DNA from: Oikopleura dioica
Lineage: Eukaryota; Animalia; Chordata
Assembly: GCA_907165135.1 (NCBI GenBank)
Contig: OU015566.1
Span: 9,920,001-9,984,000 of the forward strand
Direction: 5' to 3'
Length of the DNA stretch: 64,000 bases
Position 1 is the first letter of the stretch; every line of letters begins with the position of its first letter. Both the position numbers and the translations under genes were made by a program. The notes beneath the pieces were generated by a model. It worked only from the letters and a program-made list of their open reading frames with translations. It was not told the origin of the DNA and did no database searches. This document shows, piece after piece, positions 6,390-13,069 of this stretch.

Positions 6390-9300
6390 ATGGCTGCCTC
6401 GGTCATCGATGAGGACTTCAAACGGACGATGAAAGAGCGGAAGGAGTATTGGCAGGGATAGAGATTAATTTATAGCAGGCTGAGTTTAGAATCTCAACTT
6501 GAGATGTTTTTATTGGTAGTTTAATTGCAGCTCTGAATCCTCGAAAAGGGAACCTATTGAAAAAGGGTTGAAAGATCTCGAAGATGCTTTCAAAGAGGCG
6601 GGTTTCGGAGATGCAGAACCACATTTCAAGCGGTTGACATATTATCTCGACAAATGCAAGGATACGTCCGACTTTGAATACCACTGGAGTGAGCTGAAGA
6701 ATACGGTAGAAAAGCCAGCAGTGCAGAAGTTCCAAGTTATCGGAGACCAAGCCGTTGTTGATTTTATTGAAAAGAATCCGGACTATTTCGATGATTTTAA
6801 AGAAGTTGTCATTGAACCTCCGAGGAAGAAGCAGAGAGGTCGCCCGGCAAGATTCAAAAGTGGACAAGATACAAAAACTGACCATGCGCTAGAATTCGCC
6901 AACGAACTCCTCAAGAACGAGCGACAAAAAGAAGCTGTTTTCTCAAATGAACGAGGCACACTTAATAAACCATATTTAATGGCAGTTACGAGGGGAAAAA
7001 GAGACCGCCTACCGCAGTTCTATGTGAATATCGATGGACTTATTCGCGCCATACGAGTTGACCATATTAATCTAAGTGGAGCTTTTATGGCGAAATGTTG
7101 TGGATTCATGGGTCCAAGCAAATGCAAAGCCCGACACAAAATTCAAATAACTAACAAAAATCTTTATCACATGATTGAAGCTGGAGATGCTGGTCGAGAA
7201 CGCTTTGCCCTGAAAGAAAATGCACCCCAGCTGTTCGACCGCTCGTCATATGAGATGGTTCCCCACGATTCTATTACCGGTGTTTCTAATCTAAGTCCTC
7301 TCTGTGAACACACATGTGACGAAGTTAGTATCGAAGAAGTTATAGCAAAGCTGAAGAAAAAGGGCCATATCGATGAGAGTGAAACACTCGAGTCATTGAC
7401 AAAAAATGACAATTCTTCGATAGCGGCACTGGGCGATTCTTCAGATACTGATTCTGTGATGGAAATCGATGATTTCTGCGATGAACCAAGACGAGATAGT
7501 TCAAACGAGGACAATATTGTTGTGGAAGGTGTTTTATCAAACGAGCGAGGGACTTTGAATCTACCACACTTGGTTGCTGTTTCAAAAGGGAAGAAAGGTA
7601 GACTACCGAAATTCTTTCTGAACATTGATGGAGATATTCGCTCTGTGCGACCTGATAAGATGAACTCTACTGGAGGATTTATGACAATCTGCTCTGGAGC
7701 AAGTGGTCCCATCAAATGTAGAACTCGTCATAAAATTCAAATCAAGGATAAAAGTCTTTTCGACATCGTCAAATGCGAAGGTTCTGATCGAGAAAGAACT
7801 GCCATAAAAGAGGATGCACCAAGCCTATACGATCGTTCTTCATATGAAATTATTCCGTACGATTCTTTAGGAGGTGTTCCTAATATAGCCACCCTTTGTG
7901 AACACACGTGTGAGAAGATTCACCTAGAAGAGGTTATTGCATTACTGAGGAGAAATGGTCAACTGGATAAGAGCGAAGAAGACGATCGAAATTCCCTTTC
8001 TAACTCTGCTCTCACCAATAAAATCTCCAACGAGCGAGGATCGTCGAGTCTTCCGCATTTAGTCGCTGTTGTTAAAGGTAAACAATTGCCGAAATTCTAT
8101 GTGAACATCGATGGAAAAATTCGAGCAGTGCGCCCACAAGAAATTAATTCAAGTGGAATGATGATAATAAAATGCAGTGGCCACAAATGCAAAGGCCGGC
8201 ATAGATTTCAAGTCGTCGACAAGTCTACTATCCGACCTGCAAAGCGTAAAGGCTGTAGGGACCGTTATGTTTTTAATGAAGATGCGCAAAATCGTTTTGA
8301 CCGCTCTTCATATGAAGTCATTTACCACGATTCGGGTCACGAACATACATGTGAGACAAGTTCTGTTGAGGAAATCATTGCAGCTCTAAAGATGGTTAAT
8401 CGGGACGAAAATCAAAAACTTGAGTCATTGACGAAAAACGAAAATCCCAATTGTCTAAAGGAACGCAATTACTCGGCTTCAGAAATCTCTACTGATCCAG
8501 AGCCGATGGATCACGAGGAAAATATGCCGGTTGAACGACAAAGGAATCAGTCAAAAGAAGATGATCTTGTTGTGGAAGGTGTCGGTCAAGTAAGCCTCCC
8601 TCATTTGATTGCTGTTGCCCCTGGTAAAATCGTTCAAACGCGGCCGAAATTTTACGTCAACATTTGTAATACCTTTTACGAAATGCACCAGGAAACGCTT
8701 AATTTGGATGGTGGTGTAACGCTTGTCTGTAAGAAAAGGGACTGTAGTGCCAAATCTAAACTTCGGATTCTTGATGAGACTATGATTGCCAAGGAACCTG
8801 GCAAACGAGCACCAACATTTGTCGAGGGCTGCCCGAATGTTTTCAATAGAAATTTTTACGAATTCGAAAGATTCGATAAAACCCAAGCTCACACATGTGT
8901 TGGCGAAGATTTGAGTTACGAAGAGATTCGTTTCAAGCTGAGTAACGTGCGTGTTATCACTCCTCCGAAGCGACTTATGATTGAAAATGGAGATCCAAAC
9001 GCAAAACCATCGACAGAAATCCTATCAATCGAGTCAGGAAAGTGCATGGGTTGCTGTAGAACATTCTCTTCTTCCGACCTTCTCATCGAGCATATTCTCA
9101 AGTCTCATCGATGCTCAGATACGTATGTCCTTACATACGCGACTCACTGTTTCATTTGCTTGAAAGAACACAAAGCATTACGGACGCATTTTCGAGATAC
9201 TATCAATGGCGGTTCTGAGATTTCTACTGCCATGAAAAACTTGCATATCGACATGTACGAAGTCTACTCTGGCGAACCTTGGCAAAGTAAACTCGTCAAC

Positions 9301-11264
9301 CGAGTAGAAATTCTTCCGAGTAAGCTACGACGATCAGTTCTTGGAAATTCTTTGAATGAAGACAAGATTTTTGAGCAAAGCACGAAGGGATTTACCTGCT
9401 ACACGATCGAATCAGGGCAATGTAGCTCCTGTCACGATAATTGCGATTCTTGGGAAGGACTTCTTGCTCATTTGGAGGACCAGCGATATTACTTATGCCG
9501 GGAATACTACCTCACCAAAGAATATTGCTTCATCTGTAGCAAATTCTACTCCAAAGTTAGCCAGCATTTCAATGATGTAAAGCGCGGAAAGGGAGGGAAT
9601 TTCGCTGGGAAGCAAACTCTCGACATTCACAATGCTTTTCTGGAGCGATTTATTATCCCTTGGGTATAAACCTACTCTTTGTTATTGAGACTAACTTATT
9701 TTTAGAAAACAAAATCAAGAATCCCTAAAAATCTCTTTGCCGCAAATTCATCGATAGCAGACCAGGATTCTAGTGTAGTAAAAGTCTCCAGAGGCCATGA
9801 AATCGTGATTCCAAGCGAATACCATCCTATTGTTTCTGGCAAATGCTCCAACTGCAACGTTCAATTTGAAAACTGGAAAAATCTGATTGCTCATATAAGA
9901 GGAAAGCAGGATTGCAAGGATTACCATGTTCGCAAATATATCACATTCTGCTTTATTTGTGCGCGACCTTTCAAGCAGATAAAAAGTCATATCAATGACT
10001 GCTTGAGTGGAAAAGTTATGACATCTCCTGACGAAAGGAAAATGCACGAGCTGATAAAACCGATTTATATTCCTAATCCAAAGCCATTCCCAAAGTCAAA
10101 GAAACAAGAGAGACGAACTAAACCTCGTAAAGCTGATCCTGAAAACTCTTCAGATGAAGACGAGTCTTTCAAAACCGGAAAGATACGAAACAGAAGACAG
10201 AAAAAGACGAGGAAACTTCTTGGGAATTATAACCCGAAAGATATGATTGAGCAAGTTATCGAAGGTACTCCGTCTTTTTTTTATTTTCTATACAAAGTTT
10301 AATATAGGAGATGGTACTTCAATGGTTCCGCATCTAACTGCCATCACCATCGGTATGAAGCGCTCTCCAAGATATTATGTGACTATATCTGGGAAACTTC
10401 GAGTTCTTCGGTGCAGATCATTTTCTCATCAAAAAGAAACCTTCCGAATGCAATGTGTCGGCTGCAGTTCCGTTTACCACAGCATGGAAGTCATCGACAA
10501 GTCACTTATTCTTCATCAAGGGACGAAAAATGCGACGATTGATATGAGCAATCCGAAAATATTCGATGTCAACTCATATGCGATGCTTCCATCTGAAACA
10601 AATGAACATGGATGCTCGGTTTCCATCACAAAAGCGGTAATTATCATGCGGTAGTTGAATCTCGATAATTTTTTATTCGTAGATGATTCGAGGAATCCAG
10701 CGCGGGGAGATAGAACCAAGTAACCTTCACGCCACCAGAGATGTCGACACGAGAGATATACCTGCTGCTCCAGTTGAAAAACGGTTCGATGATCATTTCT
10801 GAGATCCCTTTTTAAAGTTTAAATCTTAGGACTACTCCTAAAAGAGCCTCTACAAAACAGTCACATCATGAGTCCGGTGACTCCGACGAAATGGAGATCG
10901 ATGATGGCGAGGATTCGCAAGAAGAAACAACTATCAGCGACGAAGAATCGGACGGCTTAGACGAAGAGAGTGAGCCGGACTCTGATGAACTCATGGACAG
11001 TACTGAATACTCAGCGACGGAATCTCCGATAAAGTCTGGTAAGAAGTAATCAATGACTTTATCTTACCCTTGATTTTAGCTGAATCTTCCAGAATTGATG
11101 TAGACGAAAATATGTCCGATGAAGCGGAGGATGAACCAGTCACTAGTACCGAAGGCAATGAACCACAGAAAACTGTAAATACTCAAGATAAATCCGAAAA
11201 AGAGATCTCATTTCATCTTGATACCTCCTCAGAAACCAACAATCCTGACAATTCGTCTCTGTAA
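6390..11264 (+). CDS. Uncharacterised nuclear-type protein 'A': N-terminal helical domain, five copies of a novel C-C...HxC domain, three double zinc-finger modules, acidic tail
   Basis: ATG 6390 follows an AG acceptor. ORFs 6568-9669, 9805-10302, 10247-10654 and acidic exons join by in-phase GT-AG introns (9664-9705, ~10265-10308, ~10628-10682, ~10786-10829, ~11040-11079). Stop at 11262-11264. Confidence 0.8.
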
Positions 11265-11305
11265 TCACATTTTTTGAATCTAAACACCTCGATACGTCTG
11301 GCAGA

Positions 11306-11444
11306 CTCTAGTACCTGCTTTTTTGTCTCGAGAACAAGTAGTGAAAAGCTCATATTTTCTCTAGAGCTTCCTTTTTTCGAACTCTTCTTTTAGTAGTCCT
11401 TCCCAGAGTTACTGAATTCTCGAGAGAAAAAGCCGGTACTAAAG
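11306..11444. repeat. ~140-bp element with imperfect ~28-bp terminal inverted repeats (MITE-like/hairpin) just upstream of gene B ATG
   Basis: ctctagtacctgcttttttgtctcgagaa (11306-11334) versus the reverse complement of ttctcgagagaaaaagccggtactaaag (11417-11444). No clear TSD. Confidence 0.6.
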
Positions 11445-11455
11445 TGTGTTTAACC

Positions 11456-13069
11456 ATGGAAAATCGAAGGTACTGTAACTCGCCAAAAAACACTCGTCGA
11501 ATCGATTTTCTTCAAAACAAATCAACGCCTAAATTTCTATTTATTTCAGCAAAAATGACTATGATCTCGACGATCTTGATGAGGAGTTTCGGCTGTTGAT
11601 AGCTAACGACAAAAAAGTATGGATCAAGATCCTGGACTTAGTGACCAAGCTCGCCACGAACGATCCGGGCTTAATGCGCTTGAAGACTATGTTACCTAAA
11701 GTTCAAAATTGTGACACCTACCTCACCTATTGGAACATCATCAAAACGAAGAGTATTCAGAAATCTCTTCCTGCCATCGAAGGCCCTGATGAGACGATCA
11801 CAGAAACGACCGCAGCGGAAAGTGATATAGAAGTAATTCAAACCGGAGAAGAAGAGCAGGAGGAGAACGCGACCGTTTCGATTCAAGAAATGTCAGACTT
11901 GTCCGATGCTCTTTCTCCTGAAGCACTTGCTCAGACAGCGGCCTTGCGTGCGCTCTACGCTCAAAGCGCGAAGAAACGATCAAGTACTGCATTGTCCTCT
12001 TCTGAACAATTGTCGCCACCATCATTTTACGTACCGCCGAAGAAACGTTTCATTGAAGTGACTCGAAATTCACCGAATAAACGAGTTACCCGACAGAATC
12101 TGCAAGAGAATACGCAGCACACTGGAATAACTCCTTTTACTCATGAAATATTGATGACTGAGGCAGACAAAAGCTTTACGAGGAACCTCCTTGGTCCTGG
12201 TTCCGCTGCAGAAAACTTAGCTCCTGCCCCAGTAGAGCCGACAATTTTGGAGGAAGTCGACGAAGACATTCAAGTCGTTTCCGAATTCGTCAACAAGCGC
12301 GGAACAGATCAATTTCCTTTCCTGGTGGCTATTCTTCTCAACGGCAACAACCCTAGATTCTGCGTAAATGTCGACGGCTACTTGCGAAGCTGCCGACCGT
12401 GTCATATCAACATGTCAAAGATGGAACTTCTTATCTTCTGCACTCGCGGTCGCGAAGGAGTGCAGTGCCGGGGAAAACACAAGTTGAGAGTCAAACACAA
12501 AGAAATGGTGCTCAAAGAGAAGGATTTTTCAAAACGATATCCTCGAAACAAACTCCGCTTGAACATTGAAAGGCCGGATCTCATCTATGATACGAAGAAC
12601 TACGAGGTTGTTTCATACGTATTATCCTCACTCCTTACTCTTACTTTAGGTCGTTCCTTACTTTTCATCCCAACATACATGCGAGCATCCGATCTCTTTC
12701 AAGGTAACTATTCATTGTTTTCACTTTTTAAAGTTTTCAGAGCATCAAAGCTGTGAAGGATGGACAAATTACGATTAAAGAGCTGCTTCCAACAAGCCGC
12801 AAGCACATAGAAAAAGAGATGATGTTGTAAGTTTCTGTTCTTGAATGAACTTATTCAAATTATCCTCTAGCCCATGCAAGACTGAAATCATCGATTCGTC
12901 GTACCCTCTTCCTCCTCCAGTAACGAGGCCACCCGTCGACAATCGCTGCCGTCCATCGAACCTCCCTGTTATTCCATTCGACGAACATCCGCATCCAGGT
13001 GGGCAAGAAATCAAGAAATCGGGGGAAATACTGACTGTTAAAATTGAAGTCACTGAGGACTGCCAGTAA
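11456..13069 (+). CDS. Uncharacterised protein 'B', paralogue of gene A (N-terminal helical domain + one C-C...HxC domain)
   Basis: Exon 1 ATG GAA AAT CGA AG|gt (11456-11469) splices in frame to 11550 and ORF 11596-12756. Later GT-AG introns give NYE|VVPYFSSQHTC and an end at TEDCQ* 13069. DEEFRLLIANDKKVW matches DEDFKRTMKERKEYW of gene A. Confidence 0.8.

What the first reader, a model, noticed from the sequence alone, without database searches (positions are those of the whole stretch)
6943..12682. Unrecognised ~110-125-aa zinc-type domain repeated six times across two adjacent genes
Seen: six copies at about 6943-7317, 7537-7911, 8026-8352, 8581-8898, 10310-10615 and 12289-12682. Consensus: (S/V)NERGT..PHL.AV..G..P(K/R)FYVNIDG.IR..R....N..G.....C-x3-9-C..RH...I.DK...D...YE......HTC, followed by an amphipathic helix (EEVIA.L). 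C, C, H and C are invariant, even across an intron in copy 6. Known: C-C...H-x-C/H on a beta sheet defines WRKY/GCM1/FLYWCH DNA-binding domains, linked to MULE transposases. Inference: a lineage-specific array of WRKY/GCM-like modules with a long insert, i.e. a possibly new family of transposon-derived multi-domain DNA-binding regulators.
Basis: partly seen in the sequence, partly recalled or inferred. Interest (0 to 1): 0.76.

Follow-up and report, generated by a model that had tools for sequence, protein, structure and literature searches.

The report
Transposon-derived FLYWCH-like zinc-finger array
Two neighbouring genes of the tunicate Oikopleura dioica carry six copies of a previously unnamed zinc-finger module that is a divergent FLYWCH/WRKY-type DNA-binding domain, borrowed from a Mutator-like jumping gene that still lives in the same genome.

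Summary
Six copies of a 110-125-aa Cys/His module sit at the stated coordinates, five in gene 1 (6390-11264) and one in gene 2 (11456-13069). They match a profile of themselves at E 1e-36 to 1e-51. Pfam finds nothing.

- AlphaFold models of copy 3 (pLDDT 91) and of a related transposase domain (pLDDT 83) both place the human FLYWCH domain 2RPR first among 48,161 PDB chains (Z 5.2 and 6.5). AtWRKY1 is second, and further WRKY and AFT2 chains follow.
- A family profile finds only 109 proteins among 1.84 billion. Two of them are true multi-FLYWCH proteins, with both Cys ligands aligned.
- In the same genome the module sits at the N-terminus of several MULE transposase frames.

The family signature is C-x4-12-C-x43-73-H-x-C/H. 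The spacer before the His is about 30 residues longer than in WRKY or FLYWCH and forms a beta-hairpin insert. The genes are conserved, spliced and co-transcribed in a second O. dioica lineage, where they are named only "uncharacterized".

The most likely function is a polydactyl DNA-binding regulator. Zinc-site geometry and DNA binding could not be tested. Verdict: new variant of a known kind.

The parts
6390..11264 (+). Gene 1. Inferred CDS exons: 6390-6451, 6549-9663, 9706-10264, 10308-10636, 10683-10783, 10830-11038, 11080-11264 (4560 nt, 1519 codons, in frame). Ortholog of O. dioica CBY21785.1 (1528 aa, 'C2H2-type domain-containing protein').
   Evidence: ORF list. Splice sites read from the sequence. 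tblastn of spliced homologs L016/L017. 46% identity to P0113. The exon lengths sum to a multiple of three.
6943..7347 (+). Copy 1 of the FLYWCH-like module, with its C-terminal helix. The core ends about 7317.
   Evidence: E 6.0e-47.
7537..7941 (+). Copy 2.
   Evidence: E 4.7e-47.
8026..8382 (+). Copy 3, the most compact copy. This is the one modelled (C50, C55, H107, C109 in its own numbering).
   Evidence: E 3.7e-51. AF2 pLDDT 91.1, pTM 0.82. Fold matches.
8581..8928 (+). Copy 4. It has a 1:1 ortholog in the Norway lineage.
   Evidence: E 1.9e-41. Tree support 99/100.
9007..9216 (+). Double zinc-finger module 1: a C-x2-C-x12-H-x6-C finger followed by a C-x2-C-x9-H-x2-D finger.
   Evidence: Alignment A5. 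Weak C2H2 Pfam hits.
9385..9606 (+). Double zinc-finger module 2.
9817..10029 (+). Double zinc-finger module 3, in exon 3.
   Evidence: zf-C2H2 E 2.5e-4, below the Pfam cut-off.
10310..10636 (+). Copy 5, in its own exon. It has a 1:1 ortholog in the Norway lineage.
   Evidence: E 3.0e-40.. Tree support 100/100.
11456..13069 (+). Gene 2. Inferred CDS exons: 11456-11469, 11550-12606, 12650-12703, 12741-12826, 12871-13069 (1410 nt, 469 codons, in frame). Ortholog of CBY21786.1 (441 aa, 'Uncharacterized protein').
   Evidence: 44% identity.
12289..12703 (+). Copy 6, split by a 43-nt intron (12607-12649). The H-T-C ligands lie in the 54-nt exon 12650-12703. The helix continues in exon 12741-12826.
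   Evidence: E 4.8e-36 for the first exon.. Tree support 98/97 with the Norway gene-2 copy.

Best explanation
The six repeats are a divergent, larvacean-restricted subfamily of the WRKY-GCM1/FLYWCH zinc-finger superfamily. It is the DNA-binding domain type that Mutator-like (MULE) transposases carry at their N-terminus.

Each module is predicted to fold into an antiparallel beta-sheet. I infer one zinc ion held by a Cys at the end of one strand, a Cys 4-9 residues on at the start of the next, and an H-x-C after the last strand. A beta-hairpin insert of about 30 residues separates the second Cys from that last strand. This is what sets the family apart, and why Pfam's FLYWCH, WRKY, FAR1 and MuDR models miss it.

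An ancestral Oikopleura MULE donated this domain to a host gene, where it was duplicated in tandem. Gene 1 now strings five modules together with three double C2H2-like fingers and an acidic tail. Gene 2, co-transcribed just downstream, carries one module.

Shown here: the repeats, the predicted fold class, the sequence link to FLYWCH, the MULE association, conservation and splicing.

Inferred: the products are nuclear, polydactyl, sequence-specific DNA-binding regulators. By analogy with WRKY and GCM1, each sheet would insert an edge into the major groove, and the array would read a long composite site. Zinc binding is also inferred.

The confidence given is for the whole statement. The fold and origin part alone I put at about 0.8, and the DNA-binding regulator role at about 0.55.
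For: Repeats: profile E 1e-36 to 1e-51 for the six copies. C, C, Y, C are invariant and H is more than 90% conserved across 19 rows at 19-55% identity.

Fold:
- Copy 3 model: pLDDT 91.1, pTM 0.82.
- Against 48,161 PDB chains: rank 1 is 2RPR FLYWCH (Z 5.2, rmsd 2.6, 72 of 87 residues). Rank 2 is 6J4E AtWRKY1 (Z 3.9). Rank 21 is 9M0K WRKY. 5W3X WRKY and 4LMG AFT2 also appear.
- Second model, of the transposase version: core pLDDT above 94. 2RPR Z 6.5 (76 of 87) is rank 1 and 6J4E Z 4.8 is rank 2. 9M0K, 1WJ2, 8K31 (WRKY) and 4LMG (AFT2) are within the top 14.

Sequence: profile A2 against 1.84 billion proteins gives 109 hits. Two of them (P0054, P0109) are Pfam FLYWCH repeat proteins (47.1 bits; P0109's 23.5 bits is just under the cut-off of 23.6). 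The profile's C-x4-C core lies on the FLYWCH Cys pair in every repeat. hhalign local E is 1.1e-4.

Transposon link:
- The host-only profile A1 hits ORFs L009, L010 and L014 (E 1e-6 to 8e-4 genome-wide).
- Those frames match Pfam MULE (28.3 bits against a 27.6 cut-off for L014/L018).
- L019, L024 and L029 carry the module as well.
- P0030 pairs the module with MULE, and P0107 pairs it with two homeodomains.

Host-gene status:
- Intact, in-frame multi-exon models.
- Orthologs in the Norway lineage with the same architecture.
- Modules are 41-52% identical between lineages, against 21-35% for the linkers.
- 1:1 orthology of copies 4-6.
- Spliced transcript contigs L016 and L017.

Framework: Babu et al. 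2006 (PMC1702500) describe the WRKY-GCM1 superfamily, its MULE-borne HxC family and repeated recruitment of such domains as transcription factors.
Against: - Foldseek found nothing significant. 2RPR was at rank 13 with E about 1.
- The VIA Z-scores (5.2-6.5) lie in the range that the tool itself calls common for unrelated folds.
- No Pfam WRKY-GCM1 family model matches any copy even at E 1.
- The FLYWCH Trp two residues before Cys1 is absent.
- A profile search of PDB sequences found nothing.
- The sequence link to FLYWCH covers only about 30-40 columns around the Cys pair and is significant only when summed over repeats.
- Some FLYWCH domains (Mod(mdg4)) are known, from my own knowledge, to mediate protein contacts rather than DNA binding.
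- A precomputed Pfam tag, PF27214.1, on the close homolog P0001 could not be identified. If it models this module, the domain already has a name.
Confidence: 0.65

Rival explanations
1. A transposon tamer. The array of transposase-type DNA-binding domains binds the ends of the resident MULE elements, or of their extinct relatives, and represses them. This would be comparable to truncated-transposase repressors or to KRAB zinc-finger proteins in vertebrates. The fold assignment is the same as in the best explanation. Only the target differs.
For: - The same module heads MULE transposases in this genome.
- One such element has two full-length copies at 97% identity and 31-nt terminal inverted repeats.
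- The modules diverge faster between lineages (41-52% identity) than the C2H2 part of the same protein (70-81%).
- Copies 1-3 lack clear 1:1 orthologs, and one environmental variant has an extra copy. This is the pattern expected of an arms race.
Against: - Host copies are only about 16-25% identical to today's transposase domains and group apart from them.
- Copies 4-6 are stable orthologs.
- The MULE family is low-copy.
- No binding data exist.
Confidence: 0.15
2. Protein-interaction scaffold. The modules keep the FLYWCH fold but serve as protein-protein contact surfaces, and the C2H2 fingers do the DNA binding.
For: - The C2H2 double modules are the best conserved part of the protein (70-81%).
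- From my own knowledge, the FLYWCH domain of Drosophila Mod(mdg4)-67.2 binds Su(Hw), and human FLYWCH1 binds beta-catenin.
- Residues that contact DNA vary widely across WRKY-GCM1 families (PMC1702500).
Against: - The closest relatives with a known context are transposase N-terminal domains, which must recognise element ends.
- One relative is fused to two homeodomains.
- Gene 2 has the module but no C2H2 finger.
Confidence: 0.12
3. An unrelated, new zinc or non-zinc beta fold that resembles FLYWCH/WRKY only by convergence. The MULE association would then reflect a separate DNA-binding domain invention.
For: - Z-scores below 8 and no significant Foldseek hit.
- No Pfam or PDB sequence match.
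- The spacing between Cys2 and His is more than twice the canonical value.
Against: - Two separate models both rank FLYWCH first and WRKY second among 48,161 chains, with up to six superfamily members in the top 14.
- The profile reaches true FLYWCH repeats with the Cys pair in register.
- The position at the N-terminus of MULE transposases is the classic place of WRKY-GCM1 domains (PMC1702500).
Confidence: 0.06
4. Decaying transposon debris with no host function, merged into gene models by chance.
For: The module is transposon-related, and other fragmentary copies with stop codons exist in the genome (L011, L012).
Against: - There are long intact frames, and the multi-exon models sum in frame (1519 and 469 codons).
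- The architecture and gene order are the same in a lineage only about 45% identical.
- The modules are more conserved than the linkers.
- Spliced transcripts exist.
Confidence: 0.02

Closest known systems
FLYWCH zinc finger (Pfam PF04500; human FLYWCH1 fifth domain, PDB 2RPR; Drosophila Mod(mdg4); C. elegans PEB-1/FLH)
   Same: - It is the best structural match for both models (Z 5.2 and 6.5, 72-76 of 87 residues aligned).
- The C-x4-C core aligns at sequence level with true FLYWCH repeats.
- It occurs as tandem arrays of up to five in one protein (PMC1702500).
   Different: - No Pfam FLYWCH hit.
- No Trp two residues before Cys1.
- H-x-C instead of H-x-H in most members (49 against 9).
- 43-73 residues between Cys2 and His, against about 20.
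- Extra N-terminal strands carrying a conserved G-x3-P-H-L-x-A-V motif.
[quoted passage not shown] 2006, PMC1702500)
   Same: [quoted passage not shown]
   Different: - That family was reported in plants, fungi and a microsporidian, not in animals.
- No long insert after Cys2 is described for it.
- The Pfam scan at E<=1 returned none of the WRKY-GCM1 family models, the MuDR DNA-binding model included.
WRKY domain (AtWRKY1 6J4E, AtWRKY4 1WJ2) and AFT2 (4LMG)
   Same: They share the beta-sheet core. They are the second-best structural match and recur in the match lists. The ligand order is C, C, H, H/C.
   Different: No WRKYGQK strand motif, and the C-to-H spacing of 22-23 in WRKY is more than doubled here. 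WRKY is plant or protist, and AFT2 is fungal.
FAR1/FHY3 and other transcription factors domesticated from MULE transposases
   Same: The evolutionary route is the same: a MULE DNA-binding domain recruited into host regulators (PMC1702500).
   Different: FAR1/FHY3 keep the whole transposase body and have their insert between the two Cys. Here only the DNA-binding domain was kept. It was multiplied and combined with C2H2 fingers.

Membership tests
WRKY-GCM1 superfamily (fold level) | Antiparallel beta-sheet core shared with solved WRKY/FLYWCH/GCM1 structures | tested here: met
   Two AF2 models (pLDDT 91 and 83). 2RPR is rank 1 and 6J4E rank 2 of 48,161 chains in both searches. More WRKY and AFT2 chains lie in the top 14-21. 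The Z-scores are modest (5.2-6.5) and Foldseek is not significant.
WRKY-GCM1 superfamily (fold level) | Four zinc ligands: two Cys around the turn between two strands, and H-x-H/C after the last strand | tested here: inconclusive
   The sequence pattern is met and conserved. The Cys pair aligns with the FLYWCH ligands. In the model, C50 ends strand 45-50, C55 precedes strand 58-63, and H107/C109 follow strand 96-99. Ligand distances could not be measured because no coordinates are returned.
WRKY-GCM1 superfamily (fold level) | Association with MULE transposase catalytic domain | tested here: met
   L014/L018: the module is at residues 39-161 and Pfam MULE at about 330-401 of one 596-codon frame (28.3 bits, cut-off 27.6). 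L009, L019, L024, L029 and P0030 show the same arrangement.
FLYWCH (Pfam PF04500) | Match to the Pfam model above the gathering score | tested here: not met
   No FLYWCH hit at E<=1 on any window ORF. A six-frame genome search with PF04500 found nothing, but its controls did not ring either.
FLYWCH (Pfam PF04500) | Trp two residues before the first Cys, and H-x-H about 20 residues after the second Cys | tested here: not met
   The position two before Cys1 is I, A, T or L. The spacer is 43-73 residues. H-x-C occurs in 49 and H-x-H in 9 of the 58 domains (of 84 near-full ones) that fit the pattern.
FLYWCH (Pfam PF04500) | Detectable profile-level homology to FLYWCH repeats | tested here: met
   P0054 E 3.1e-7 and P0109 E 8.3e-4 against 1.84 billion proteins. 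P0054 passes Pfam FLYWCH (47.1 bits); P0109 scores 23.5 bits, just under the 23.6 cut-off. hhalign local E 1.1e-4 over 31 columns.
HxC family of MULE WRKY-GCM1 domains (Babu et al. 2006) | Short Cys-Cys spacer, H-x-C ligands, MULE context | tested here: met
   The spacer is 4 in most copies (4-14 in the wider family), and H-x-C predominates. MULE context. Direct homology to plant or fungal members of that family was not tested. The Pfam scan at E<=1 listed no such model.
Sequence-specific DNA-binding transcription factor | Binds defined DNA sites and regulates transcription | not testable with these tools
   Inferred from the fold family, the transposase context, the fusion to homeodomains in P0107 and the C2H2 fingers and acidic tail of gene 1.

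The most novel reading that the evidence does not exclude
The array is a host defence built from the enemy's own DNA-binding domain. In this reading it is a fast-evolving, copy-number-variable 'polydactyl' protein whose modules track the terminal repeats of Oikopleura MULE elements and silence them. That would be a functional analogue of vertebrate KRAB zinc-finger proteins in a very compact animal genome.
Probability: 0.12. Interest if true: 0.72.

Novelty: new variant of a known kind. Interest (0 to 1): 0.46.

Why it matters
It gives a name and a testable function to two Oikopleura dioica genes that public databases list only as "unnamed" or "uncharacterized". One is 1,500 residues long.

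It adds an animal, insert-bearing H-x-C branch to the WRKY-GCM1/FLYWCH superfamily, one that current Pfam models miss.

It also offers an unusually clean case of transposase-domain domestication. The donor-type MULE elements, single-module host paralogs and a six-module host locus all coexist in one 64-Mb genome. Copy number and sequence change between cryptic species.

The principle itself is well known: MULE DNA-binding domains become transcription factors, and FLYWCH domains form tandem arrays. The gain is therefore a new branch and a good model, not a new concept.

Tried and rejected
- **Pfam** on all window ORFs at E<=1: no zinc-finger family other than weak C2H2 hits.
- **PDB sequence searches** with the ORF and with profile A2: nothing.
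- **ESM Atlas** on copy 2: no usable hit.
- **Foldseek against PDB:** no significant match. Only the exhaustive aligner brought out FLYWCH and WRKY.
- **The search for related loci with alignment A1:** I used P0002 instead.
- **PF27214:** not in the local Pfam library. The only paper hit for that string is unrelated.
- **Genome search with PF04500 (FLYWCH):** empty, but its controls were empty too, so it says nothing.
- **Shared N-terminal helical domain in genes 1 and 2:** I first thought they had one. BLASTP finds no similarity, so I dropped the idea.
- **MITE arms as the MULE's own terminal repeats:** I first read the 140-nt multi-copy stretch at the head of the L009 frame that way. The inverted-repeat analysis shows it is a separate MITE of about 520 nt, nested just upstream of the transposase start. 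The element's own candidate ends are 31-nt repeats 3.07 kb apart.
- **Names for further environmental hits:** none available, so the range of the family beyond O. dioica stays open.
- **Joined spliced proteins:** none was sent to any search or fold tool. Exons were searched by reference. Copy 6 was joined from its exons only inside one local tree script.
Full report
**What is there**

The window is chromosome-scale contig C4:9920001-9984000 of a 64.3-Mb, 19-contig assembly. The organism is Oikopleura dioica: the named relatives of the two genes are CBY21785.1, CBY21786.1 and AAS21377.1, all from that species.

A 1033-codon open frame (6568-9669) holds four copies of the module. Further frames hold copies 5 and 6. 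Aligning the six gives 30-56% identity to copy 1 (A1). A six-frame search of the whole genome with that profile returns the six copies at E 3.7e-51 to 4.8e-36.

**Gene models (inferred)**

These rest on reading splice sites and mapping the spliced homologs L016 and L017 onto the window.

- Gene 1 has seven coding exons: 6390-6451, 6549-9663, 9706-10264, 10308-10636, 10683-10783, 10830-11038 and 11080-11264. They total 4560 nt, or 1519 codons. The Norway ortholog has 1528.
- The first intron of gene 1 (6452-6548) has to be GC-AG to keep the length of the homolog.
- Gene 2 has five coding exons: 11456-11469, 11550-12606, 12650-12703, 12741-12826 and 12871-13069. They total 1410 nt, or 469 codons.
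- Both sums are multiples of three, which supports the models.
- The intron inside copy 6 is better placed at 12607-12649 (43 nt) than at 12619-12649. The spacing from Tyr to His then equals that of the intron-less transcript.
Exons were used by reference. Copy 6 was joined only inside one local tree script.

**Architecture**

Gene 1, in order:
- an N-terminal region that is 60% conserved between lineages;
- four modules;
- three copies of a 60-70-aa double zinc finger (C-x2-C-x12-H-x6-C, then C-x2-C-x9-H-x2-D; A5);
- a fifth module;
- an acidic tail.

Gene 2 has a long low-complexity stretch, one module and a short tail.

**What the module is not**

Pfam gives no hit to FLYWCH, WRKY, FAR1, MuDR-DBD, GCM, THAP or BED, even at E 1. 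PDB sequences give nothing. The ESM Atlas gives nothing.

**What it is**

*Line 1: structure.*
- AlphaFold2 with a 19-row by-reference alignment (A2) gives a confident model of copy 3: pLDDT 91.1, pTM 0.82. It is mostly beta, with strands at 11-16, 23-28, 31-40, 45-50, 58-63, 69-71, 81-83 and 96-99.
- Foldseek is not significant. 2RPR is at rank 13, though with the highest probability in the list.
- The exhaustive aligner against 48,161 representative chains puts the fifth FLYWCH domain of human FLYWCH1 (2RPR) first: Z 5.2, rmsd 2.6, 72 of 87 residues. AtWRKY1 (6J4E) is second at Z 3.9, and another WRKY is at rank 21.
- A second look at Foldseek's own top 1,000 chains adds the RRS1 WRKY domain and AFT2.
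- A separate model of the transposase version (L018, A4; core pLDDT above 94) gives the same answer more strongly. 2RPR scores Z 6.5 with 76 of 87 residues. 6J4E scores Z 4.8. 9M0K, 1WJ2, 8K31 and 4LMG are all within the top 14.
- Each Z alone lies in a range the tool calls common. The repeated, exclusive appearance of one superfamily at the top of two searches is what counts.

*Line 2: sequence.*
- Profile A2 against 1.84 billion representatives finds only 109 proteins at E<=1e-3.
- Scanning 108 of them with Pfam shows two FLYWCH proteins, one MULE and one homeodomain protein.
- P0054 (FLYWCH 47.1 bits) and P0109 are arrays of canonical FLYWCH repeats. The profile aligns its columns 35-73 to every repeat, with both Cys in register.
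- hhalign of A2 against those repeats gives a local E of 1.1e-4 over 31 columns.

*Line 3: context.*
- The profile built from host copies alone (A1) also hits L009, L010 and L014 in the same genome. These are open frames of 376-611 codons whose downstream part matches Pfam MULE. L014/L018 scores 28.3 bits, above the 27.6 cut-off.
- L019, L024 and L029 are further, divergent MULE frames with the module at the N-terminus.
- This is the position and partner that Babu et al. 2006 describe for WRKY-GCM1 domains. Their 'HxC family' (short Cys-Cys spacer, H-x-C, MULE-borne) is the closest described relative (PMC1702500).

**What is distinctive**

Across 84 near-full domains from 70 proteins, 58 fit the pattern C-x(2-14)-C-x(37-73)-H-x-C/H, most often C-x4-12-C-x43-73. 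Of these, 49 have H-x-C and 9 have H-x-H. WRKY has 22-23 residues between Cys2 and His, and the FLYWCH repeats seen here have about 20. The extra residues form a beta-hairpin, which is long in the transposase model (strands 76-86 and 93-103) and shorter in copy 3.

The FLYWCH Trp is missing. There are extra N-terminal strands carrying the G-x3-P-H-L-x-A-V and P-K-F-Y-V-N-I motifs.

**Is it a working host gene?**

Yes, as far as sequence can show.
- The Norway-lineage orthologs keep the same order of parts and the same neighbour.
- Between lineages the modules are 41-52% identical, the linkers 21-35%, and the double C2H2 modules 70-81%.
- Copies 4, 5 and 6 have 1:1 orthologs with 98-100% support. 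Copies 1-3 are unresolved.
- An environmental variant (P0002) has one extra copy.
- The transposase domains group apart, with weak support of 79/84.
- L017 lacks five stretches of 41-124 nt that genomic L015 has, so it is a spliced transcript. It runs from the end of gene 1 through about 120 nt of spacer into gene 2. The pair is therefore co-transcribed, as in an Oikopleura operon.

**Mechanism**

Shown: repeats, predicted fold class, homology link, transposon link, conservation and expression.

Inferred: one zinc per module held by C, C, H-x-C. DNA would be read by the sheet edge, as in WRKY and GCM1. Five modules plus six C2H2-type fingers would read a long composite site, and the acidic tail would act as an effector region. 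One distant relative fuses the module to two homeodomains (P0107), which fits a transcription-factor use.

Rivals:
- The array may target MULE ends as a repressor. The faster module evolution and the copy-number change speak for this. The low identity to living transposase domains speaks against it.
- The modules may be protein-contact surfaces, as some FLYWCH domains are.

**Novelty**

No paper in the searchable library mentions Oikopleura together with FLYWCH. Public names for the genes are 'unnamed', 'uncharacterized' or 'C2H2-type domain-containing'.

The superfamily, its MULE origin, domestication into regulators and tandem FLYWCH arrays are all established. This is therefore a new variant: an animal H-x-C branch with an insert after Cys2.

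One open point remains. The close homolog P0001 carries a precomputed Pfam tag, PF27214.1, which is absent from the local library and which I could not identify. P0002 and P0003, with the same modules, carry no tag.

**Limits**
- The range of the family beyond O. dioica is unknown, because most hits are unnamed environmental contigs.

Noticed in passing
window 9007-9216, 9385-9606, 9817-10029: There are three copies of a 60-70-aa double zinc-finger module: I-x-S-G-x-C-x2-C-x12-H-x6-C followed by C-F-I-C-x9-H-x2-D. It is the best conserved part of gene 1 between lineages (70-81%). Only weak, sub-threshold C2H2 Pfam hits were found.
   Followed up: partly
L017:1-3023 against L015:4145-6617; window 11264-11456: Contig L017 is spliced relative to genomic L015 (five stretches of 41-124 nt removed). 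It spans the 3' end of gene 1, a spacer of about 120 nt, and gene 2. This is evidence that the two genes are one polycistronic (operon) transcript in the Norway lineage. In the window the spacer is about 190 nt.
   Followed up: partly
window 6452-6548: The first intron of gene 1 has to be GC-AG (non-canonical donor) to reproduce the E-Y-W-x-P-I-E-K junction of the homolog. There is no GT donor in a suitable place.
   Followed up: no
G000:C3:264168-267237 (L009:1-3070): This is a candidate autonomous MULE element of 3.07 kb, with 31-nt terminal inverted repeats (90% complementary) and a 611-codon transposase frame. A second copy at C4:5923271 is 97% identical. Three further sites carry a single end, one of them the C4 copy. 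Target-site duplications were not checked.
   Followed up: partly
L009:1908-2427: A foldback MITE of about 520 nt is nested just upstream of the transposase start in the C3 copy only. Its arms occur more than 40 times in the genome, often as inverted pairs 0.4-0.5 kb apart. It may be related to the MITE noted earlier at the start of this window.
   Followed up: partly
P0107 (334 aa, unnamed environmental protein): This protein has two homeodomains (Pfam E 1e-24) followed by one copy of this module, with H-x3-C. The domain combination appears not to have been described.
   Followed up: partly
L007 (G000:C2:2844736-2845080), L013 (G000:C1:12551855-12552136): These are single-module host paralogs, annotated only as OKI2018_I69 gene models (P0006, 226 aa; P0009, 257 aa). 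L013 has H-x3-C in place of H-x-C.
   Followed up: no
P0001: P0001 carries a precomputed Pfam tag, PF27214.1, that is not in the local Pfam copy. P0002 and P0003, with the same modules, carry no tag. Its identity is unknown.
   Followed up: partly
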